Below are positions 11,801 to 63,399 of a stretch of 64,000 nt of DNA, piece after piece. This stretch comes from Trichoplax adhaerens (taxonomy: Eukaryota; Animalia; Placozoa), in assembly GCF_000150275.1 (NCBI RefSeq), contig NW_002060944.1, forward strand, positions 9,076,159 through 9,140,158, read 5' to 3'. The notes beneath the pieces were generated by a model. It saw nothing but the letters and a program-made list of their open reading frames with translations, was not told the origin of the DNA and searched no databases. The position numbers and the translations under genes are program-made. The stretch's first letter is position 1. Every line of letters begins with the position of its first letter.

Positions 11801-12921
11801 CAAGCTCGCCAAATTTCTATCCATAAACTGGATAACATTATCTGTAGTACTCCTGATGGTAGCTATTCTATCGTGATAGTTCTAAATCGATCAGGCTTTC
11901 TATTGTAACATTCTAAGGTTATCAAGCTTTTCGAAGTATTTTTTTAATGTTAACCTAGTTGATATTTAACTTTTAGGGTATTTTTTATTGTGATATTCTT
12001 AAATCCTTTTCTACTATTTTACAAAGCATTTCAAGATTACAGAAAACTTGTAATGTACCTTCGTAAACTGCAACACTTGCAATAAAATTTTCTTTAGTGT
12101 ACACATCTTCCTCAATGGTTTTACGTCTATTCGATTTAATTAAATTGCAGTACTCTTTGTAAAATGGTTAATATTAATGTAGTTCTAAATTTCTCTTATT
12201 TTTAAGTTTAAGAGTTGTTTCACCGGCTAAAACCTATTTCGATTATATTTCTAATAGTATATGTGGTCTAGAAATTCACAACGAGCATCACTTCTTGACT
12301 GCGTTAAGGAACAGCTGACTAAAACTCATCACCAATATCAAAACTTAGCGCAAAATTTTTCTGAAGATAAAAAGTAAGTTTAATTATTAATGGACAATCT
12401 GATGTTGCCTCTCATATAAATTAATAGATCAGATGAAGAGCACTGTAATGCATTCTTCATGTATTCGTATATTTATAGTTTACGGTTCCTTAGATAATTC
12501 TACCATTCGACCAAGATTTGATCTTGATTATTGTAAATTTTGATACACGCAAAACCTTTAAACAATTATACTCAAAACTAGTTTCTATATAAATAATAAT
12601 TGAGTAAAGCCGTAAGTTTAATTACACAATTTAAAATTACTAGATCCAGATTACTGTTTGACTAATTCTTTGCGACTCATGACAGACTATTTATCATTAA
12701 TCTTTGATAGAATTAAAGTCTGTCCAAGATTATAAGTTTTTATCAATTATTATTTTAGAACTGCATCAGCTATGTATGATCTTGTTAAAGAATTAACAAA
12801 ACAAAATGAAACTTTCAAAAAGGATAACGAATATCTTAAAGAAATGATTTATTCCATTGCTCAGAAAGTTAATGCCATATCACCTACCCAAGCACAACCC
12901 ATTTTACCCGATGTGTGTTAA
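2879..12921 (+). CDS. TRPA1-like ankyrin-repeat TRP cation channel, paralog a (25 exons, about 1150 aa)
   Basis: Exons 2879-3130, 4114-4294, 4451-4629, 5265-5384, 5488-5596, 6176-6267, 6527-6571, 6721-6894, 7075-7269, 7373-7456, 7577-7821, 7990-8101, 8382-8551, 8651-8735, 8859-8918, 9320-9403, 9520-9590, 9705-9840, 10062-10169, 10476-10648, 10744-10876, 11045-11230, 11564-11743, 12258-12373, 12759-12921 splice in frame (3453 nt). About 17 ankyrin repeats (TPLHYA, TPLHLAA etc.), linker LIEKLPEVAQAVMDRC, pre-S1 LILHPLTVAYRMHKW, FGQYIVMF, filter MFVGEINF, S6/TRP-like NLLIGLAVGDI, C-terminal coiled coil. Confidence 0.92.
3171..3794 (-). mobile_element. Probable solo LTR in intron 1 of TRPA-a
   Basis: Termini TGTTACGA...TCGTGACA (7/8 inverted, TG..CA); flanks CCAGG / CCAGC (4/5 target-site duplication); the minus strand reads TATATAAA - GC hairpin (CGGCGAGTTCGCCG) - AATAAA at about 3360-3331. 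Confidence 0.65.
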
Positions 12922-23100: not shown

Positions 23101-26100
23101 TTACAGGCTGTCATGGACCGTTGTGTAGTTCATTCCACCCATCCATCAAATCATCCAGATGCATTTGTAAGCATCTTTTTAGGGATGAAATTAAATCACT
23201 ATTCTTGATTTTTTTATGAAAGTCATTCAATAAAAGTGACAGGTCAAATTACAATTATTAAACATTTCACTTTCCTTTCAGATTACCTTTAATTTCAAGT
23301 ATATCGAATCATCACCTGAGCATGTTCATTTACAAGAAAATAAAGATAAATACTTAACTATCTCGGTAAATATTATTAGATGGTTTACATTAATCGCGTG
23401 CATCACAATAAAACATATTCTCATTTGCCATAACTATGCCAGATTAAATTAAAAACAAATTTATCATCAAAACTTTTCTCTCTACCCTTGTGAATGGAAT
23501 GATAGTCTCGCTAGCTACTATTTAATTTTTTACTTCTTATAGAGTATGGTCGCATCAAATCGGAGTGAATTATTATCTCATCCATTAACAATGGCCTATC
23601 GAATGCAGAAATGGTATTATTTCTTCCCATGTTATTACACCAATACGATAAAATTAAACCTAGCAGAAAATGGTTAAATTCAACAGCTTCATCTTTTCGG
23701 CTAATATAAGTAGTGAAGGAGCTATTATGAAATAGGATAGCGCTTATCGGTTTCGTTTTGAAATAGATAAAAAGTTTCGTCTAATTATGAATTTAAAGTA
23801 TCTCTGTGATTAAGTATGCAAGTGTACATACGAATGTATGAATATGTATTAGAAAAGTAAGAGACCTATAGTATACGATGCTATGGAACCTGTAAACCCG
23901 TATATTAATCTGATGAGTACTTCAAAGATTTAAATTTGATTAAATTAAGTATTGGACATGAATCTAACTGACTTAACAATTAATAATTTAACAATTTTAA
24001 TAATCGATCAATAGTTTGTAGACAATATTTAATAGCATACGAGATGATATCAAATGAATTTTAGGATTAATTTTAAGTCTTCTATCTCATATGTGTCGAA
24101 TAATTAGGAACGGTGGCATAGGTTTAGCGTATTACCTGAAACTTATCTTCTACATTATAATTGTTTCTATCTTTGTTTTGGCAATGGGGCTTGATATAAT
24201 CTGCCATCCTTCGGCTAAAAAACGTATAAATAACACAATTATAGTAAGTAATATTTTATAACCGATTCAGATAGAGCGATTATTATCGTGAATAAGATGA
24301 AATGGCTAATTTTTCAACTATTCATTACAGGACTGTAGCTTTTTCTCGCGTACTTTCATCAACAATTCTTCTATAGTAGTTATGATTCTTGGATTTATGG
24401 TATTATTCGCTCACTTCATTTATATTTGGAGATGGGTAGGTCATTCGATTTCATCATTATTACGTTAACCATAATTCTAGCGAATTAACTTGATCTAAGA
24501 TTTCTCGGAAAATGCCTTTCATAAAGCGTATTTTCATACAAAAGTGTAGTTTAAATATCACCGATTTACTTTTTATTGTAATCAATTAAGAAGTAAATCT
24601 TCCCTATGATTTTAGAAATATCATGACGAAATTCTGCAGTATTTAAATTTTATACCAATCAATAATTTTAGTGATTATATTTTATTTTATTGCCGCACTG
24701 TCTTCATGACTCATTGATTTATCCAACAACTTCGTAACAGTTATTTTTAACTATGATAGAACATAATATTGTTTCAATAATGTAATTTATCTTTTCATAA
24801 GCAAAAAATATATACTATTTTGGCACAGCATTATGATATTGACAAAAATTGTTTGCTAGTCAAAATTTAAAGTTTAAGATATCTTTTTCTTGATATCGCC
24901 GTATCATCCTTATGATTTCTAATCGGATTATTCGATATGCTTTATCCATCTATGATAATAGCTACTGTATTTTCTACCCTTACGAAATATTACTGTAGAA
25001 AGCGAAATTTTGTCACGCTGTCATAACTCTGCACAAACAATGTAAACAGCGATCTATTAGCAATTAACTTTTATGCCACTTATTATCTCGTATGTAGCAT
25101 CGACATAGTTATTTCAAATCTAAGTACATTTAGATCTTAAGATATACCTATTTATGTTATTTAAATTTCTTTTTAGCCATTTGAATATTTAAAGAAACTA
25201 TCAATCAATGGCATTGAAGTTATAATTGCCTTCTTAGCCATAATTGTTAGCATAATTTCCTTAACACGCCGACATAATACTGTCAACGAACAAGCGGGTG
25301 CTGTCTTGATATTCTTAACACAACTGGTTTTAATCGTAAATTTACAGAGGTAAAAGAAAATTATGCCTTATAATTAGACTTCTAATTTCTATTATTATAT
25401 CTATACCATGATTTAAGACGCATTCATCACTATATAATTTCTTACTATTTGAACCTAGAGCTCATTTTTTTGGTAAATATGTCGTCATGTTTATATCCGT
25501 CCTCAAGACAGTTATAAAAGTCATGTTTCTTGTAGCCTTATTCCTATTTATTTTTATGATTTCATTCGTTATGGCTTTCAACATTAATGACGTAAGCTTT
25601 ACTCTTACATAAATTAACATTAATATTTCAGCCATTTATTTCCATATTGAATATGTAAAAGTGTTATATAACAGTATATCGATCTATGAATATAAACTTA
25701 ATGTAATATAAATTTAATTCCGTAATAATATCCTAATCTTTTCGGCAGACTGCTCCGTTCGCAACAATCTTCAATTCTGTTTTGAGTACAGTAGTGATGT
25801 TTTCAGGGGAAATCAATTTTAACAGTAACTTTCAATCTCCATCTCATAACTTACCTCCTGGCCAACTGGTATCCCTCGGATTACTCTTGATCGCTTTCAT
25901 TGTTATCATGAATATTACATTGTCCAACTTACTGGTAATTCTTAACTCCTAGGCTTATATATTAAGGCCTATTACTAGAGAGGTTATAATATTCATTTAC
26001 TACCTCATAAATGACAGTGCAATGTAAAAATATACGATAATAATATCTTTGTGCAAGCATACACGTATATTAGGCAGAACAAAATGGTCATTTTCTAGTA

Positions 26101-35235: not shown

Positions 35236-35519
35236 TCTAATCATGTTGCAAGTCACGACGCAATACCGCCGGTCTTAAGCTCTTATTACTGGCGCAGTAT
35301 TGAAAACATTTTTGAATACAGAATAATAGTGTCAAGCAGGACCAGATCATGAAGGCCTTTATACTAGATCATTTCCTATCCATCGTGTTTCAATTTCCTT
35401 AACATTATTAGACTAGGTTCAGCATATTTATTGGGGAATTTATTTATTTATTTCAGCCATTGAATACGTCAACACTGGTGAAATGAAATTCACCAATGTA
35501 CAGAATTACAACCTGAAAG

Positions 35520-52505: not shown

Positions 52506-55500
52506 ATGGCCAGTTTTCTGAAAACTACTCGATCCCTCGGCAATTTGGTAGGACAACAGATGATGTTCATGATGAGCTAGTATCACTTACAATTAATTGT
52601 TTAAGCTAGTGACACTGTTCATTTTTATATTTAAAATGGCAGATGACTAAAATCTTATGTTACTTTATTTTTAAAAACAAATTTGCTGACCAACATTTTC
52701 TTTTAATCCATTTAAACTCGTCGGACGCTTTCTGCAGCCAGCCCAAGTGCGAAGTATCCTATTTGCCCGCGGACTACCTGTTCGTACAGCTTGGACTGGG
52801 TTACAGTCTATTTCAGAAGATGACCCAGAACTGTTTGATATCATTCGTAGAGAAAAATCACGCCAGAGAGGAGATTTGGAATTGATTGCTTCGGAGGTAT
52901 GATAGCGTCTAAATTTTCAAAACTCAGCCTGGACAACGTTCAAATCCACATGACACATGAGATGCAGTGATAGCTACGGTGCTGTACTGTACTGTGCCGT
53001 ACTTTGACATGAAATCTCGAAAATCAACAATGACTGAGCCAGCTAAGCAATGTGAGATAGAGTCAACCTAAAACGATGTAATTTGCATTGCTAGCTTGGG
53101 CATTATGAAGTGAAATATTTTGTGATTTATCTTTTAAAATTGGTTAATTAATTATAGTATGTTCAAAGCACTACTTTACACTGAAAGGCACTGTAATCAT
53201 TAATGAATGTGCAGTTGGCTATCATTTGCTTACCATAGTACAATATATTATATATTAAATTGCCATATTTATCATGAACATTCTTATTCGTTAGATAACA
53301 TCGGCGATAACTTTATTTTAATTTATAGTCACTTAATTAATCGCTGTCAAATGCGACTAGTTTATTTCAGAAATCAATGCACAATGTATCGAAGGGATCC
53401 ACACTTTCTGTGTTTACGCCTTTTATATTAGTTTTACTGAATCTACACACGCACTGTCTAATACTCGTACAGTACATAGAATTGTTAGGAAAATTTGTTT
53501 ACCTCCTAATACGGTGTGCGAATGTTTCTGTTAGGCAGTGGACAAGTAGACTGTCCATTCCAATGGACAGTTTGAACAGCTTTGGTTGTTAATAGTGTGA
53601 GCAACTACGAAAGAGCATATCTTTCTCTCTTTACTGTAATACAAGTCACTGTAGTACTTTTCATGTGACAAAGTCTAGGCTAAAATTATATAATTCAGCG
53701 GCACGTCGCCAGCATCTAACGATCAAATGCCGCTGGTCGTTCAGTTACAGGTTTTGTACAGAAAAGGCATCACTTGTAGCAGTGACACGCCGATCATGTA
53801 GAGGTAGCTTTATGTATCATCATACTCTTGCTAACGCTTAGTCCTAAATTAATGTTATAGATGTACGAGTATATACAGTATTCCAATCGATTTAGATTGT
53901 GCTTTAAGCCGCTGTGGTGCCGTCAGTAATTATTAAATGTGTACATGCACGGACAATCAGCGAAATGCAATAATTACGCTATTCCTATTACTACTGCAAT
54001 ACTGGTAAATGGATAAAACCCTTCACTTTGTACATTAAGTTAATCATAGCAGTAGTTTTACCAGCCTGATTGCCATGGAGCAGTGGAACAGACAAAGATT
54101 TTTAGCTGACTCTTGATTTTTACAATGACTGGTTAAGGCCAGGGTCGGCAATGATATAGAAATATTAATTTACAACCTGTTGCTTTATTTGAATAGCAAA
54201 TTAATTAATTCATGGCATTAACTACTATTGAAACCCTGATATTTGTAATGTGTAAGTTGCAATTACAAAAATCGTGATAAAATTTCCTTATAAACCGATA
54301 TGCTGGAAGCAAGCGTAACGTACAGCTGCACACCTTCCTAAATCACGATTAATTTTAGTAACTACTAAGGTAACTTTTAAAATATGAACGTAATGGTGCA
54401 GTAATCAGACTGCAGCGTTTTCTGATTAATTCTATATCAGCATAGCTTTAGTGTAGAACCGAATCTTCGGCAGATGTATGCAAATGTTTAGCACATGCAC
54501 ACCAATTTTTTGAATGCACAATCCTGATGGATTTATGCTGTATTTCATACGGCACGTGTTTCGATGCCGGCCGTAAATAATACAGTTATACCAGCTGTCC
54601 AGGGACGCCCTTACCACGGAGCTATGTTCTGAGGACCTCTAGTTTATATAACGCTGTCTAGCGTTAAAGTAGCCCCTCCCTTAATTTTTGCCTTATTGTT
54701 ATACAGACTGCAGTCCGCTGTACAAATACGAGCACAGTACATTACTGTTAGTACGGTGCCGAACGCACTATTGCAATTACTAATTCGCCAAAGAAGATAC
54801 AGAATGTTGCTATTACAGAAAAATTATGTTGTACATGTTGTGAAACGAATGTTGATGAGAATTTTTTACTACTTACACCAACGTAAATGCACCTAGACCT
54901 GATGCTTTCGCAACTTCCTAAACAACAATTGATGTTGACAGAGAATATAGTGTTCTGTACAGTGTTTAACTGTATTATATGATATTATTGACCGATCACC
55001 ATAATGATGTTCTAGTAATAATTTTTATTACTATTTAATGAAGAATTTCACTAGTCGGGCTGTCATGAATGCTCTTGGATCCTGCTTGACCAATAAATAC
55101 TCGGAAGGATATCCTGGCCAAAGGTAAGTTTGTATGTAATAAATAAATACAACTGTACTACAGTACTTGTAATCAGCTACAGCATTTGTTGTGTGTAGAT
55201 GGAAGCTTCGAAATTAGTTATATGCATTTTATTACAACATTAATTTCGAGATAAAATGTATGTTATTTTTGTATACGTTTACTGTTTCGCCTGTTGAAAT
55301 TATTATTTTACGTTCTAAAAGTACTTCGATTGGCTATAAATTAACAACATTAGATTACTGTAATGTATCATACATCAATTACTATGTACATTAAGTGATT
55401 AAAGCTTAGACTAATTATTAATAACAAATTATCTAATATAGATATTATGGTGGAAATCAGTGCATTGACGAGATTGAACTTATGTGCCAACGTCGTGCTT

Positions 55501-58500
55501 TGGAAGCGTACGACCTTGATCCAGAAAAATGGGGAGTTAACGTGCAACCATATTCAGGTAATAGCACCCATAAAGTAACCTCATATAAAGAAGCTATCTA
55601 TTCTATCGTATTCGTTCATCATTTAACTGACAATATGTTTGCTTCATGAAAACTCAGGGTCACCTGGCAACTTTGCAGTCTACACTGGTTTATTAAAGCC
55701 TCATAGTAGAGTTATGGGTCTCGATTTACCTGATGGTGGACAGTAAGTCGTAACCTTTAACGTTAGTTTACGTGAATTATCTAGTGCACATCTTATGGAT
55801 CTATTTGAGATGATATTTCTCATATTTTGATCAATAGTTACTAATAACATCGTAAATGTAGTAGTACAATAGATTAACATAAGATAATATGACATTTTGT
55901 TAACACATCGAACGCTCATTCCATAATCTACTTCGTATGGTTATATTTAGTTAACTTGTAATTTTAAAACCTTTACAGTTTAACTCATGGATTTATGTCA
56001 GGAAAAGTCAGAATCTCTGCAACGTCAATTTACTTTGAATCATTGGCTTATCATTCCCACGTAAGTATGATTACTTAAGTTCTTTTCAGTCTGATATAGA
56101 ATGGCTCACGATAATGAAGTTATCAATTACTGAATCTTCATACTGCGCGACTGTATAATTTATATAATCGATCTGTCATAATATCAAAATCTTTTTCTAT
56201 TCAAGCAACTCTTTACTTCGAGAAATAGTTAGATTATCCAACTTTTATATGTAATTCTTGCAAGTAGTCAGAAGTAAAAGGCGGTAAATGGTAAGAAGGC
56301 GTGCCATCATCTTCAGCATACTACACTTACAGTAAAATACTTTCTTCAACAATACCTATCTTAGTCACTTGTTAATTATTAAGCACATGAAATGCTACAC
56401 GATGCAGATACCGCTTAAATTTAGTGAGGGTCTGATTATATTACGTATATATTAGCTAAAAGAAGAGAACATAAATTAGATAAATGAAGCGAGTAACGAT
56501 TTTTCACAATAGTACCGACTAAATCATATGCTACTTTGGTTACAAACGAATGTAAGAAAAGATAATCTGCATACTAGGTCCATTAAACAACTTTTGTATA
56601 TTAAGAAATATAACAAGTTAAATTAATTCTATCTGATGATGGAGTGGGCCCCGTAATGATTAGGTATTTACTATTAGTTGAAATCTGGTCGTTATAAATG
56701 TTTTCTACTGCATACAAGTAAACGCTGATGTATTTCGCTCCGTTAGATGAATATCAACGGCAATGTGGGTGTTATATTATCAGCAGTATTTAGTTGCTGA
56801 TTTCTTCAATATTTTTCGATCTCATGAATTTAACACTGGTCATTAATATGAAAATAGTTTTAAGATCTCTTACGCCTGCGTCAGCTCTTCACTGAGACAC
56901 CATTGTCAGTTTACAGTTTTACTTAAAAATTATGTCTGCAGCGTATCTGCTGAATCTCTTCTCTGATCTACGGTAACCAATTATCGCTATAAAGTAATTG
57001 CTGATATCAAAAAGTATTTGCAGCGCTACAATGAGTTACAATTATAATCTATATTAACTCTAGTCTAGTGAATAAAATGTTTTAGGAAAGCTCAGACAAT
57101 TTTTTTTGTCCTTTTCCTCATTCCTACTGCTGGTATTGAGTAACTCGGACCAATTTAAATAAATTGACGGCAGACCTGCAGAAAGCATCTGTCTGTCCTG
57201 TATAGTGTACAGTACCTTACTCTATCCACTGTCCAACTGTATACAGTACTATAGTGATGGCGGCATTTCTATCTAATTTGCATAAATCCCATAATAGAAG
57301 AAATAGTACCAAAGCCACTATATAAATCCAATCGAACTTGCAAAGTGAGTGAGTTAGGTTAGAAGCTCGCTGTAGGGGCTACATTCGAGTGCTCTTGTAC
57401 TGATCAATCATGATACAGATGCACAATTCGCCCTTGGGAAGGTCTGAGACCAAGGTCGCTTTACGTCTTCCAGACGAAGGCCGCTGTAACAGGCGGGTGG
57501 GTCACCAGAAATTGGCTTGATGGAGTTTATATCGGTCCAAGACACTACAAGGGATTTATCTCTTTAGTGGAGGCCATGAACTTGCATCATAGTTGAAAAA
57601 AGACTCACGACCAGCTGAATGAGTTCAATTAGCGAGGTGGCACTTATGTGTTCTAACTCAATTCAGACTACTCTCTGACCTAGCTCGCGTCTTTTTATCG
57701 CTAGTAGAACTTGGTATACTATCGGAATTTTATTCTTAATTTTGCAGTACAGACATTGAAATATTTCAATCGCCTGGATTGATCTGTAGATTTACGCACT
57801 AGATAATCATCACTCTGTAATAGCTAAAAATGGAAACCCTGCATGTAGAAGGTATTTACATCGTCGACGTAATAATATTGATATGATTGGAATAAGGATG
57901 TACGCAAAGGTGTCTTTGTAAATTCTATGCTATCAGAATAATATCATGATGTTTGTTTAAAGAGCCTCTGGTATTCCCGTAAAACCAAGGCTGAATTCAA
58001 AAATAGACTAAAAGCCATTTTACTAATGATCATCTATTTAGTATTTTAATGGTTGATACTAGATCCATGATAACTATCGATGTATTTTATAACTATTCTA
58101 GCCGGATACTGGAGAGGTTGACTACGACGCATTACAAAAGCAAGCGAAAGCATTTGTACCAGAAATGATTATCGCAGGAACCAGTGCCTATTCCAGATTG
58201 TTGGACTATCAAAAATTTCGCGAGGTACCGGCTTCTAAAGTAGATAGAATCACTTAGTTATAGTAACATGTTTATATCAAATAGAATCTTTTATTGTTTA
58301 ATGTACTTGAAAAGATTCGTCAATGTTATGATTACGTAAGCGTTGTAATTAATTTTTGTTAACTTTCTCTCCCTAGATATGTAACGATGTCAAGGCAATT
58401 CTCATGGCCGATATGGCACATATTAGCGGCCTTGTTGCAGCTAAGGTATCTCAAGAATATTCTATAGTATCAACATATAGCGTGGAAGTCTCATTGCTTT

Positions 58501-60052
58501 ATCATTATAATCATAGAGAATCTTTTTGAGCTTTCAAAAGTTCGAATGCGTTTCTTACTCTAAGTCAATATTCGTGAAAATGTATTTGTAGGTTGTCCCT
58601 AGTCCTTTTGAATATGCTGACGTTGTAACAACTACTACTCATAAAACCCTCCGGGGCCCAAGGTAATAAGCCCTTAATGCTTTCAGTTTGATTCGAAGTG
58701 ACATCATGTATTCAATTAACATTCCAAATTGATAGATCTGGAATCATTTTCTACCGCCGCGGTGTGAAGGGGGTCGATAAGAAAGGAAATGATATCCTTA
58801 AGGAATATTGACTTAGTATTAATAATTATGTTACGTGATAAAGTTGCTGTATCAGACAGGAAGCAGCTTTATAATTGAAGAATTCCTTGACCAAGTTTAA
58901 AAATTAAGTATGATTATGAAAGCAAGATCAATAAAGCTGTCTTTCCCGGTCTGCAAGGAGGTCCTCACAACAACGTCATAGCTGGTGTTGCAATCGCTCT
59001 GAGACAGGTTAAGTCCCATGAATCAGGACAACAACTACAAATGTGTATACTGAATGGTGACCTTATGACTTGTTTATAACAATATCATTGTTTTAATTGC
59101 AGGCTAAAACTCCAGAATTTGTTGAATACCAGAAACAAGTATTAAAGAATTGTAAAGCCATGGCAAATGCCTTGCTTAATAAAGGATACACACTTATTTC
59201 AGGTAGGCAAAATTATTAATAGCTACTGTTTTTCTCCATTTTATATGCATGTACATTGTACATTGTTTAGTAAATTAGTTTATGATTTCTTCTATGCAAC
59301 ATTTTGTAACTTTGCAAGTTATTTTAATTTAAGGTGGTACGGATAATCACCTTATTTTGGTCGACTTAAGACCAAAGGTATGTCTGTCTTTTGCCTTTCG
59401 TTAAGTAAAATCAATGGGATGACTTCAGTTCAAACGTCTAATAAGTTTTATTGATAATATGATTTTAAAAATCTAGGGAGTAGACGGATCCAGAACAGAA
59501 AGGGTTCTTGAACTTGTCAATATTTCAACGAATAAGAATACTTGCCCTGGTGATAAAAGCGCCCTATTTCCTGGCGGAATGAGACTCGGTAAAAATTATA
59601 GCATCAAATTATTGCTTTATTTGTACAAGCTACTGGTAATCATCATTTAATACTTTTATTCATTGATCTGACTAGTGGCTTAGCTTAGTGTTGACACGGA
59701 TTTTTGACAACTCTTCTAGGAACACCAGCGTTGACATCGAGAGACTTTAAGGAAAAGGACTTTGAACAAGTTGTGGAATTCATTGAGCGTGGCGTACAGA
59801 TTACTTATGAAGCAAAGCAAAAAACCGGTTTGTATTTATCTTCACCAATAGGATTTGCTACTGCATGTGAAACCTGATTTCTATATTGCCGTTTTTAGTA
59901 TGTAATTGCTTTTGTATTGCTGTTCAGGTACCCTGAAAGAATTCAAGGAGTTCGTTATCAGTGACCCTGATATTACTGCAAAAATTAGTGCTCTTCGTCA
60001 AGAAGTGAAAGAGTTTGCTGAGCAATTTCCTATGCCTGGTCAAGATTACTAA
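52506..60052 (+). CDS. SHMT2: Serine hydroxymethyltransferase, mitochondrial type (16 exons, about 492 aa)
   Basis: Exons 52506-52547, 52738-52896, 55044-55123, 55442-55557, 55658-55742, 55979-56060, 58102-58224, 58377-58445, 58592-58662, 58736-58791, 58901-59007, 59103-59202, 59334-59377, 59477-59588, 59720-59827, 59928-60052 (1479 nt). [43 protein letters not shown] site [26 protein letters not shown]. Arg-rich, acid-free N-terminus [35 protein letters not shown] resembles a mitochondrial presequence. Confidence 0.93.
57276..57326 (+). promoter_or_regulatory. Putative type-3 Pol III promoter of the RNase P RNA gene
   Basis: Octamer ATTTGCAT 57276-57283, PSE-position element TCCCATAATAGAAGAAA about 57287-57303, TATATAAA 57319-57326 about 30 nt before the predicted 5' end. 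Confidence 0.7.
57349..57690 (+). ncRNA. RPPH1: Nuclear RNase P RNA (H1-type), nested in SHMT intron 6
   Basis: CCCTTGGGAAGGTCTGAGAC (CR-I), TAACAGG, CCAGAAA, AGACTCACGACCAGCTGAATGAGTTCAAT and TAACTCAATTCAGACTACTCT (CR-V) match the recalled vertebrate H1 RNA in order; GTCTGA pairs with TCAGAC (P4); the ends GAGTTAGGTTAGA and TCTGACCTAGCTC form P1. Confidence 0.96.
57692..57696 (+). terminator. Pol III oligo-T terminator
   Basis: TTTTT a few nt after the 3' strand of P1. Confidence 0.7.
58792..58900 (+). other. U12-type (minor spliceosome) intron in SHMT with apparent AT-AA ends
   Basis: 5' end ATATCCTT, branch site TTCCTTGAC 58883-58891; splicing G|AA ATT AAG TAT restores [15 protein letters not shown]; the unspliced frame hits TGA. 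Confidence 0.85.
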
Positions 60053-61641: not shown

Positions 61642-63399
61642 TCATTTCAGAATCGGAGTTTTTTTTTTGCCGAAAAAGGCATCCGCGAACAGTCCTGCAA
61701 AGACGAGCAATACTCCAATCCATTGTTGCGTAACCAATTTATTTGAAAATATAATAACGGAAAATAAAATAGTAAAGAACTTTCTGGTGGTAGTAATTAG
61801 GGCACAGGTTAACGGTCCAAATGCAGAAATACACTCAAAGATAAAACTCTACGGTAATAATAGAAAAAACGTCAACATTGTAACGATTATAATAACCGTG
61901 ATTGAGGAATATGAAAATTGAAATTTTATTCAAGATGATAAAAAAAATTTTTACCTGTCCAATTGCGCTAGTAATGCAGAACCCAAGAACGTACCAGTAC
62001 AAAGATGGATGACGTGAACAAAATGAGATAAATTCCAACCCATCACCAAATGATACCATGACTAATAATAATAATATAGTTATAAGTTAGGTTAAGCTGT
62101 GAAACTGAGAAGTTTGTATTGGCTAATAATGAAAATTGTAGACATGAGTCCAATTTGATTGATGAACGACTTACTAAGTAATAAGATGGTAGAATAAAAA
62201 TTGGTATGATACATCATCTCGTAACCGCCAACATTTGCCCTAGCTCTCATTTTGTCTTGAATAGCACCAGTAATTCCATCTGACGCTAATGATATTAGCT
62301 AAGAACAAAATTGATACAGAGTTTAATAGCTTTTTCTTAATTTATAGAGCGGCACTACAACTATTCAGGTTGGAAATAAGGCCTTACTAGTAATAATTCT
62401 CCAATGCCGAAATTGGCTTTAAATGTATGTTCAGATCTCTGCTTAGGAAATTACAAAGAAAGAGCAATGTCAAATGTACGTAGATATCGCACATAGAATA
62501 GCTAGCATACTCGTAAGGTATTCACCTACCGTCTTGTAAAGCATAAAGACTACAATTCCAAAGACAATAAGGAGAACAGATAAGTATTTCGTTAAGGAAT
62601 ATCGTTTTCCTCCAATTAAAGCCCCAAGTATCATGACAGGAATTGGTTTGCATGCTTTTCCCAAAACCTAATGATTTATATCAAGTTCATATTATCTTAT
62701 GGACTGACTAATCATCACAACGGTAAAACTCATGATTAAAATCATTACTCTATGTATACTATTGCTATCAACTGTACATCGTATTCTTTTGAAAATGTAG
62801 CCATGTTCAATTACCTGTTCGGGATAGTTTATGAATATTAAAGCCTTATTACTAGCTGTCATGGCTCCAATATATGTCAAAGATAGCATGAAATACCAGT
62901 GCGAAGGCGTTTCGCTACTCGTCTTTCCAGCAAGCTGTACACCTAAGAGTTATTGCATCCAAGAACATCCAAATAGAAGCACTTTATTATACACATGAAA
63001 GATGAGTTACTTTTATCCTACTGATTTTAGTAGCCTTGAACCGCTAAAATGGGTGCATCATTCAACTACTAACATCAATGATTGTCTTTACGTGGCAAGT
63101 ACAGTATACAAATGTTCTACCCTATCAGGAGTTGATTTATGTTATTGGAACGTCTTATTGATGAATTACCGATTGAAGTACGAACAATATCAGAAATAGT
63201 ACTAATCTTCTCTCTGATATTGCGTTCAATATTGATTACAGTAAGCTCCTACAGAGCAAGTTTATTTATTCAATTCATTCATTCAATTAGCTTACCGACA
63301 CGAGCAATGAGCAAATTAGCCAAGCATTGGAGAGCCACTAAAGAGGTTGAAAATGTAAATTTATCTGTAGTACCATCGATGCTAAATTTGCCACGAGTA
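61642..63399 (-). CDS. SLC35B1: SLC35B1 (UGTrel1/AXER, ER ATP-ADP or nucleotide-sugar transporter family); 5' exon(s) not found in the window
   Basis: Seven exons read TRGKF...[94 protein letters not shown]. Confidence 0.92.

What the first reader, a model, noticed from the sequence alone, without database searches (positions are those of the whole stretch)
58792..58903. Minor-spliceosome intron with non-canonical AT-AA termini in SHMT
Seen: exon 10 ends AAT G|ATATCCTT (U12 donor consensus) and a U12 branch site TTCCTTGAC follows at 58883. No AC lies between the branch site and the next exon, and both nearby AGs (58894-58895, 58907-58908) give immediate stops. Only cuts after AA keep the frame: after 58900 (GNEIKYDYE, favoured by the SHMT pattern G-x-E-I-x-Y) or after 58903 (GNVKYDYE). 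Established: AT-AA is a rare U12 subtype and U12 introns often limit mRNA output. Inference: retention gives a stop 5-6 codons in, so this intron could rate-limit mitochondrial one-carbon metabolism. Standard gene predictors would mis-model it.
Basis: partly seen in the sequence, partly recalled or inferred. Interest (0 to 1): 0.8.

Follow-up and report, generated by a model that had tools for sequence, protein, structure and literature searches.

The report
AT-AA minor-spliceosome intron in SHMT
One short intron of the mitochondrial-type serine hydroxymethyltransferase gene of this placozoan-like genome carries perfect minor-spliceosome (U12) signals but ends in AA instead of AC; a related species shares this, so it is a real but known kind of rare intron that gene predictors would miss.

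Summary
The exon ends AAT G|ATATCCTT at 58791|58792. TTCCTTGAC lies at 58883-58891. No AC follows it, and both nearby AGs are out of frame.

The gene is a 16-exon SHMT (52506-60052, + strand). Its other 14 introns are all GT-AG. All four minor-spliceosome snRNAs are present in the genome.

The decisive evidence is a 704-nt metagenome scaffold (L012) from a diverged relative. Its exons differ from the window at 43 sites, 32 of them third codon positions. It has the same exon structure, the same G|ATATCCTTA donor, a branch site at the same spacing and the same AAAAA run. Both window AGs read AA there. So the AA end is conserved, an AC-to-AA assembly error is unlikely, and the in-frame GT-AG alternatives cannot work in the relative.

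Pfam SHMT coordinates leave exactly one profile position for the split codon. That fixes the cut after 58900 (GNEIKYDYE) rather than 58903.

AT-AA is the commonest non-canonical U12 subtype, so this is a new member of a known kind. The rate-limiting idea is untested, and no transcript data were reachable.

In passing, I found at least three more AT-AA U12 introns in this genome: exportin-7, a KCBP-like kinesin and a Ras-family gene.

The parts
52506..60052 (+). SHMT gene, mitochondrial type. It has 16 coding exons: ATG at 52506, exon 1 at 52506-52547, exon 2 from 52738, stop codon at 60050-60052.
   Evidence: tblastn of the intronless paralog against the window. Junctions read. Pfam PF00464 matches to single exons. 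PDB SHMT hits. The N-terminus [14 protein letters not shown]|[17 protein letters not shown] has no acidic residue, and the paralog lacks this extension. Mitochondrial targeting is therefore an inference.
58736..58791 (+). Exon 10, encoding (R)[18 protein letters not shown] plus the first base (G) of a split codon (phase 1).
   Evidence: Pfam maps N (58788-90) to SHMT profile position 256. The orthologous exon in L012 differs at 13 sites, 11 of them third positions.
58792..58900 (+). U12-type intron, 109 nt, termini AT...AA.
   Evidence: It is the only non-GT-AG intron among the 15 in the gene. The donor, the branch site and the AA end are conserved in L012, whose intron is 103 nt at L012 363-465.
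58792..58800 (+). U12 5' splice site ATATCCTTA.
   Evidence: It is identical over 9 nt in L012, while the intron interior is not alignable.
58809..58811 (+). In-frame TGA reached if the intron is retained, after six extra codons (DILKEY).
58883..58891 (+). U12 branch-site motif TTCCTTGAC, with the presumed branch A at 58890. TGA at 58888-90 is in the frame of exon 11, so any acceptor must lie downstream of it.
   Evidence: It is complementary to the GAGTAAGGAA box of the genome's own U12 snRNA. L012 has TTTCTTGAC at the same spacing.
58898..58900 (+). 3' splice site TAA|, 10 nt after the branch A.
   Evidence: This cut gives G|AA = Glu, then Ile-Lys-Tyr. It fills the single profile position 257 between N (256) and I (258). 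The result has the same length as the paralog and as uninterrupted homologs such as GVKGVNKQGKEIKYDYE. L012 has CAA| at this point, so a pyrimidine at -3 is kept.
58901..59007 (+). Exon 11, encoding (E)[35 protein letters not shown]. It is followed by a GT donor at 59008.
   Evidence: The differences from L012 at 58905 and 58908 are synonymous third positions.
58902..58903 (+). Alternative AA acceptor, 13 nt from the branch A. It would give GNVKYDYE, one residue shorter.
   Evidence: It is in frame and within the published optimum distance of 11-13 nt (PMC3584512). It requires a deletion relative to PF00464.
58764..58908 (+). In-frame GT-AG rival: GGT|GTGAAG (or GGG|GTCGAT at 58773) joined to TTAAG|TAT. 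It would delete 12 (or 9) conserved loop residues.
   Evidence: The AG at 58907-08 is AA in L012, so this route does not exist in the relative.

Best explanation
Positions 58792-58900 are a 109-nt minor-spliceosome (U12-dependent) intron of the AT-AA subtype, in phase 1, in the mitochondrial-type SHMT gene of a genome that is most likely Trichoplax adhaerens. The proposed mechanism follows what is known of U12-type splicing. U11 recognises /ATATCCTTA, and later U6atac does. U12 pairs with TTCCTTGAC and bulges A58890. The 3' cut is then placed by distance from the branch point rather than by an AG or AC, at TAA| ten nucleotides downstream. This joins G to AA and gives ...GVDKKGN-E-IKYDYE... Shown here: the signals, their exact registration with the coding gap, their conservation in a second species, the presence of the four minor snRNAs, and the gap-free fit of the 58900 cut to the SHMT profile. 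Inferred: that the minor spliceosome actually removes the intron, and that 58900 is the main cut.
For: (1): the other 14 introns are all GT-AG, and only this gap is not. There is no GT or GC between 58775 and the in-frame stop at 58809. TGA at 58888-90 bounds the acceptor on the other side.
(2): the 5' splice site ATATCCTT and the branch site TTCCTTGAC are both perfect, and there is no polypyrimidine tract.
(3): U12 (97 bits), U6atac (105), U11 (99) and U4atac (59) are all above the Rfam cut-offs in this genome; the U12 snRNA carries GAGTAAGGAA.
(4): ortholog L012 from a diverged relative differs from the window at 7, 4 and 32 sites by codon position. It keeps G|ATATCCTTA, a branch motif 10 nt from the same AAAAA run, and has no AC and no AG at all between the in-frame TGA and the exon.
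(5): N maps to PF00464 position 256 and I to position 258, so exactly one residue comes from the split codon. The paralog, P0003 and P0026 are gap-free over the same stretch.
(6): the paralog and uninterrupted homologs have the same loop length and the pattern G-x-E-I/V-x-Y.
(7): other U12 introns of the same genome with homology-fixed frames also end YAA| at 10-11 nt (exportin-7 and the kinesin). The geometry therefore has precedent here.
Against: I had no transcript or junction read. A branch-to-3' distance of 10 nt is one below the published optimum of 11-13 nt (PMC3584512), whereas 58903 lies at 13. The relative's branch motif has one mismatch (TTTCTTGAC). The motif pair alone is no commoner genome-wide than the backwards control (17 against 11). 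The genome's U6atac lacks the AAGGA box thought to pair with the 5' splice site (noted for Trichoplax in PMC2396436). Only one other species was available for comparison.
Confidence: 0.8

Rival explanations
1. The same U12-type intron, but the main 3' cut is after 58903 (also AA). This gives GNVKYDYE, one residue shorter. Alternatively, both AA sites are used.
For: It is in frame. 58903 is 13 nt from the branch A, inside the published optimum of 11-13 nt. Selection of the U12 3' site is reported to be error-prone (PMC3584512). The 58905 T/C difference from L012 is synonymous under this model too.
Against: It needs a deletion of one PF00464 position that the paralog and all close homologs fill. 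It loses the conserved Glu of G-x-E-I/V-x-Y. Its -3 base would be A in both species. The 58900 cut has T/C at -3, as do the other AT-AA introns found here.
Confidence: 0.12
2. A major-spliceosome GT-AG intron from GGT|GTGAAG (58764) or GGG|GTCGAT (58773) to TTAAG|TAT (58908). The U12-like motifs would then be coincidental.
For: Both combinations are in frame. GTGAAG is an acceptable U2 donor. Another intron of this gene uses a TTTAAG| acceptor. The bacterial enzyme lacks this loop (my own knowledge of GlyA).
Against: It would remove 9-12 residues ([12 protein letters not shown]) that are encoded in frame, match PF00464 positions 248-259 and are under purifying selection between the two species. 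In L012 the AG is AA, so the route does not exist there. It could at most be a minor cryptic isoform in this species.
Confidence: 0.04
3. Artefact: an AC-to-AA sequencing or assembly error at 58900, or a decaying pseudogene.
For: The site lies in an A5 homopolymer run. There is only one assembly of this genome in hand.
Against: An independent assembly of a diverged relative has the same A5 run and no AC. The gene has 16 intact exons, 14 clean GT-AG introns and strong third-position bias in its substitutions.
Confidence: 0.03

Closest known systems
Non-canonical U12-type AT-AA introns, e.g. human/mouse RASGRP4 and FLJ21106 and human MSH3 (Sheth et al. 2006, PMC1557818, Tables 2-3). AT-AA is the commonest non-canonical minor-intron terminus in animals and plants (Larue & Roy 2023, PMC10639083).
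   Same: ATATCCTT donor, TCCTTRAC branch site close to the 3' end, no polypyrimidine tract, 3'-terminal A instead of C. The AA end is conserved between two species, as for RASGRP4.
   Different: The host gene (SHMT) is not one for which I found any U12 report in the held library. The lineage is placozoan-like. Here AT-AA seems to be frequent rather than exceptional among A-type introns.
Canonical AT-AC U12-type introns
   Same: The 5' splice site, the branch site, the short branch-to-3' distance and the dependence on U11/U12/U4atac/U6atac (inferred).
   Different: The last base is A, not C. The distance of 10 nt is one below the 11-13 nt optimum.
A-type (AT-AN) minor introns defined in the CENATAC study (PMC8280824)
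   Same: It belongs to the AT-AN class by sequence.
   Different: I have no data on retention or on a CENATAC orthologue in this organism.
U2-dependent AT-AC introns (Wu & Krainer 1997, cited in PMC3584512)
   Same: They also begin with AT.
   Different: Those have a U2-like donor (ATAAGT-like) and no U12 branch site. This intron has the full U12 donor and branch consensus.

Membership tests
U12-type (minor-spliceosome) intron | 5' splice site consensus /RTATCCTT | tested here: met
   ATATCCTTA at 58792-58800, identical in the ortholog L012.
U12-type (minor-spliceosome) intron | Branch-site consensus TCCTTRAC near the 3' end | tested here: met
   TTCCTTGAC at 58883-58891. It is complementary to the genome's U12 snRNA box GAGTAAGGAA. 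L012 has TTTCTTGAC, one C-to-T change that would still allow a G-U pair.
U12-type (minor-spliceosome) intron | Short branch-point to 3' splice-site distance (optimum 11-13 nt, PMC3584512) | tested here: inconclusive
   The distance is 10 nt for the 58900 cut and 13 nt for 58903. Ten is just under the optimum, but it recurs in the exportin-7 intron of the same genome and in L012.
U12-type (minor-spliceosome) intron | No polypyrimidine tract before the 3' splice site | tested here: met
   GACCAAGTTTAA precedes the cut.
U12-type (minor-spliceosome) intron | The organism has U11, U12, U4atac and U6atac snRNAs | tested here: met
   All four are above the Rfam gathering scores in G000.
U12-type (minor-spliceosome) intron | Canonical termini AT-AC or GT-AG | tested here: not met
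   The termini are AT-AA. No AC or in-frame AG is available. This places the intron in the recognised non-canonical AT-AA subtype and does not exclude it from the class (PMC1557818, PMC10639083).
U12-type (minor-spliceosome) intron | Removal shown to depend on the minor spliceosome, or the junction seen in RNA | not testable with these tools
   No transcript data were reachable. The word search found no transcript-derived fragment of this gene.
Serine hydroxymethyltransferase (PF00464) | Match to the SHMT profile and to solved SHMT structures, exon by exon | tested here: met
   Exons match PF00464 positions 152-191, 215-237, 226-262 and 258-292, with E-values down to 3e-13. PDB SHMT hits reach E = 1e-13. 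Fifteen exon pieces are collinear with the paralog. I did not search the joined protein.
Mitochondrial SHMT isoform | N-terminal targeting presequence | tested here: inconclusive
   There is an extra basic, acid-free N-terminus of about 35 residues encoded by exons 1-2. It is absent from the intronless paralog. I ran no targeting predictor.

The most novel reading that the evidence does not exclude
In this placozoan genome the 3' end YAA| is not an oddity. It may be a main, perhaps the prevailing, terminus of A-type minor introns. Among the short introns with perfect ATATCCTT and TTCCTTRAC signals that I could place in genes, four end in AA with no in-frame AC or AG: SHMT, exportin-7, a KCBP-like kinesin and a Ras-family gene. 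A DEAD-box-like gene is a probable fifth. Only one candidate ends in AC. That would mark a lineage-wide relaxation or shift of the last intron base in minor splicing, possibly driven by AT mutational pressure. Placozoan gene models would then be wrong systematically at such introns. Separately, the SHMT intron position was absent from about 25 other eukaryotic SHMT exon fragments. It may therefore be a placozoan-specific U12 intron.
Probability: 0.45. Interest if true: 0.6.

Novelty: new member of a known kind. Interest (0 to 1): 0.4.

Why it matters
For this gene, the correct protein (…GVDKKGNEIKYDYE…) can only be obtained by allowing an AT-AA intron. A predictor restricted to GT-AG, GC-AG and AT-AC must truncate the gene, skip 9-12 conserved residues or split it.

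More widely, the case adds a cross-species-conserved AT-AA intron from an early-branching animal. Together with the other AA-ending U12 introns seen here, it suggests that minor-intron catalogues for placozoans undercount, and that the identity of the last intron base is weakly constrained in this lineage.

The idea that the intron throttles one-carbon metabolism remains speculation.

Tried and rejected
(1) I aligned the paralog with all 15 exon pieces as separate rows to make a profile for a full-length search. MAFFT scattered the fragments, so I dropped the alignment. Every search was exon by exon, by reference.

(2) The word search with the exon-11 open frame found no transcript-derived or annotated placozoan protein. 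It returned only exon-sized ORF calls from other eukaryotes, plus P0001. I could not retrieve the public gene model of this locus because of the search's length window, so the 'mis-modelled' claim is unchecked.

(3) Two metagenome DNA pattern scans for further orthologous introns found nothing.

(4) The primary papers on 3' site distance and terminal dinucleotides (PMC86782, PMC1370826, PMC60238) are not held. I cite the review PMC3584512 instead.

(5) The pattern survey with longer spacing (161-420 nt) and with a relaxed branch motif gave counts near the backwards control. The flanks did not look like genes. I treat these as noise.

(6) PDB and Pfam did not identify the flanks of L026 (downstream side), L028, L057 or L061. 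Their intron status stays open.

(7) L017 looked like a hit, but it is coding sequence of a midasin-like AAA protein, so it is a chance match.

(8) Some exportin-7 peptide fragments returned may be mammalian, possibly human. I only read short peptide strings. I fetched, saved or compared no DNA for them.

Full report
**Setting.** The window is G000:C1413:9076159-9140158 of a 105.63-Mb genome in 1414 contigs. That size equals the 105.6 Mb listed for Trichoplax adhaerens in PMC4773876, Table 1. The genome's U6atac carries GCCGA where most species have AAGGA. PMC2396436 reports this variant for Trichoplax among others. I therefore take the organism to be T. adhaerens or a very near relative. This is an inference. 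Nothing suggests a human contig.

**The gene.** Stop-free stretches and tblastn of an intronless paralog define an SHMT gene on the + strand.
- The ATG is at 52506 and exon 1 ends at 52547.
- Fourteen further junctions were read.
- The stop codon is at 60050-52.
- Fourteen of the 15 introns are plain GT-AG. The exception is the gap between 58791 and 58901.
- Single exons match Pfam PF00464 and solved SHMT structures.
- The N-terminus has a basic, acid-free extension that the paralog lacks. This fits a mitochondrial isoform, but I did not test it with a predictor.
- I did not build or search the joined protein. All searches were exon by exon, by reference.

**Observation.** One search confirms every sequence statement of the finding.
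- G|ATATCCTT has its A at 58792.
- TTCCTTGAC is at 58883-58891.
- No AC lies after the branch motif.
- The AGs at 58894-95 and 58907-08 both lead to immediate stops when joined to the phase-1 G.
- Retention reads six codons and then TGA (58809-11).
- One correction: cuts after 58897 (TT) and 58906 (TA) are also in frame.

Taken singly, the motifs are not rare. Even the pair within 40-160 nt occurs 17 times in the genome against 11 for the backwards control. The motifs alone therefore prove nothing. Their exact registration with a coding gap is what counts.

**Why an intron must start at 58792.**
- The frame through 58737-58790 encodes [18 protein letters not shown], which maps to PF00464 positions up to 256.
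- It is under purifying selection (see below), so the exon reaches at least 58790.
- Between 58775 and the read-through stop at 58809 there is no GT or GC.
- The only donor-like sequence is the perfect U12 consensus.
- On the other side, TGA at 58888-90 is in the frame of exon 11. The acceptor must therefore lie in 58891-58908.

**The minor spliceosome is present.** U12 (97.3 bits), U6atac (104.8), U11 (99.2) and U4atac (58.7) are all found above the Rfam cut-offs. The U12 gene carries GAGTAAGGAA, the complement of TTCCTT-G-A-C with the A bulged.

**The comparative test.** The word search with the exon-11 open frame returned P0001. Its contig is a 704-nt ENA metagenome scaffold, fetched as L012. 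L012 holds the end of exon 8, exons 9-11 and the start of exon 12 of an orthologous gene, with the same intron positions.
- Exons 9-11 differ from the window at 43 of 234 sites: 7, 4 and 32 by codon position. This is a well-diverged relative with a functional gene.
- Its intron 10 is 103 nt against 109 nt, and the interior is unalignable.
- The first nine bases (ATATCCTTA) are identical.
- The last 22 bases are 16/22 identical. They include TTTCTTGAC at the same ten-base distance from the same A5 run.
- Both window AGs read AA in L012.
- As a result, there is no AG and no AC anywhere between the in-frame TGA and the exon in that species.

Three things follow. The AA terminus is conserved and is not an assembly slip. 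The two in-frame GT-AG alternatives of the window (58764 or 58773 to 58908) cannot operate in the relative. The differences at 58905 and 58908 are synonymous third positions, so these bases are exonic.

**Which AA.**
- Pfam maps N (58788-90) to profile position 256 and I (58903-05) to position 258. Exactly one residue must come from the split codon. Only the cut after 58900 provides it (G|AA, Glu).
- The paralog (GIRHHDQSGQPIYYDLQ) and uninterrupted homologs ([34 protein letters not shown]) have the same length and are gap-free against the profile.
- The -3 base of this cut is T in the window and C in L012, giving a YAA| site. The 58903 cut would have A at -3.
- Against 58900: the branch-to-3' distance is 10 nt, one below the 11-13 nt optimum quoted in PMC3584512, while 58903 is at 13.
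- I put 58900 at about 0.8 as the main site. 58903 remains a possible minor alternative, since U12 3' site choice is reported to be error-prone.

**What is known.**
- AT-AA is an established non-canonical U12 subtype. Sheth et al. 2006 list three human, four mouse and one Arabidopsis case, some conserved between human and mouse (PMC1557818).
- It is the commonest non-canonical terminus in animals and plants (PMC10639083).
- It belongs to the AT-AN class that shows higher basal retention in human cells (PMC8280824).
- I found no report of a U12 intron in SHMT and none on minor-intron termini in Trichoplax.
- About 25 SHMT exon fragments from other eukaryotes run straight through this position. 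The intron is therefore not widespread, although the taxa behind those fragments are unknown.
- My classification is a new member of a known kind.

**Function.** Nothing here bears on it.

**Seen in passing: AA ends recur.** I checked the genome-wide pattern hits and found further U12-type introns whose reading frames are fixed by homology and which have no in-frame AC or AG.

| Locus | Gene | Junction | 3' end | Distance (nt) |
|---|---|---|---|---|
| L013 | exportin-7 | ...QIYAM-K-LKGISICF, gap-free against exportin-7 fragments | TATAA\| | 10 |
| L027 | KCBP-like kinesin | same length as KCBP between DLL and DIKKD | CATCAA\| | 11 |
| L019 | Ras family | Pfam positions 59\|60 | TATTAA\| | 20 |
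| L026 (probable) | DEAD-box-like | not fixed by homology | CTATAA\| | 11 |

- Only L028 looks like AT-AC (11 nt), and its gene is unidentified.
- First-reader notes for this genome, which I did not check, list AT-AA introns in HBS1L and spermine synthase and AT-AC introns in VPS11, KIF15, SRSF10 and AMD1.
- So the scan has met this kind of intron before on other pieces of this genome.
- The sample is small and I chose it by a strict motif. It nevertheless suggests that YAA| is a regular 3' end for A-type minor introns here.

**Limits.** I had no RNA evidence and only one comparison species. The public gene model was not retrievable. The survey of other introns is partial.

Noticed in passing
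L013:1501-1640 (+) = G000:C1392:687680-687819: Exportin-7 gene. The U12-type intron reads atg aa|ATATCCTTCC ... GTTCCTTGAC gatgtataa|g ctt aaa. The split Lys codon and the sequence ...QIYAMKLKGISICF are gap-free against exportin-7 fragments from other species. AG and AC are out of frame, so the termini are AT-AA with a branch-to-end distance of 10 nt. This is the same geometry as the SHMT intron.
   Followed up: yes
L027 minus strand, + coordinates about 1491-1616 = G000:C1412:5448898-5449023: KCBP-like kinesin. The junction reads ...LLAAVNSE|ATATCCTTTT ... TTTTTCCTTGAC tttacatcaa|CCA GCA AAG ATG GAT ATT AAG. The frame is fixed by AKMDIKKDKN|GMV against KCBP. AC (12 nt) and AG are out of frame. 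AA at 11 nt gives the same loop length as KCBP.
   Followed up: yes
L019 minus strand, + coordinates about 1482-1617 = G000:C1410:8258616-8258751: Ras-family gene with the atypical motif WDMTGNE. The junction reads gaa a|ATATCCTTAAC ... CTTTCCTTAAC ttttcattttgggtattaa|ga ttt aaa. Pfam Ras positions 59|60 meet at the junction. The termini are AT-AA, but 20 nt from the branch motif, which is unusually far.
   Followed up: partly
L026:1501-1599 (+) and L028:1501-1605 (+): L026 is DEAD-box-like upstream (GRTGR motif). It has no in-frame AC or AG, and CTATAA| lies at 11 nt, so AT-AA is probable. L028 has long open frames on both sides and an in-frame AC at 11 nt. It is the only AT-AC candidate in my set, and its gene is not identified.
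   Followed up: partly
L011:688-2100 (+) = G000:C1413 about 9230792-9232204, 96 kb downstream of the window gene on the same strand: A second SHMT gene as a single uninterrupted open frame of 470 codons from its first ATG. It has no N-terminal extension and matches PF00464 end to end (E = 2e-194). It is presumably the cytosolic isoform. It is intronless, while its neighbour has 15 introns.
   Followed up: partly
G000:C1402:438491-439592 (-), loci L002-L007: One full-length U6atac (105 bits) is followed within 1.1 kb by five 5'-truncated U6atac-like copies (31-50 bits). The full copy has GCCGA in place of the AAGGA box that is thought to pair with the U12 5' splice site, yet the introns here keep ATATCCTT.
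   Followed up: no
G000:C1411:3643404-3644557 (-), loci L021-L025 and L043-L046: A tandem repeat whose unit carries AGG|ATATCCTTATACCCTTCCTTAAC, that is, a U12 donor-like and a branch-like motif a few bases apart. It inflates genome-wide motif counts. A first-reader note (s1-743004) describes a 144-bp minisatellite of this kind.
   Followed up: no
window 12303-12311 (-), 25257-25265 (+), 35395-35403 (+), 62591-62599 (-): There are four further TTCCTTAAC motifs in the window, making five in all against 0.89 expected. None has an RTATCCYY donor within 6 kb upstream on its strand. The excess is unexplained.
   Followed up: partly
L012:432-644 (protein P0001): The database 'protein' that led to the ortholog is an artefactual ORF call on eukaryotic DNA. 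It starts at an ATG inside the intron and reads the in-frame TGA of the branch site as Trp. The tool reports that the locus does not translate to the query.
   Followed up: yes
L017:1501-1607 (+) = G000:C1408:65602-65708: ATATCCTT...TTCCTTAAC lies here inside a continuous open frame of about 1000 codons of a midasin-like AAA protein (DE-ISLADDSVLERLNSVLE). It is a reminder that the motif pair occurs by chance in coding sequence.
   Followed up: yes
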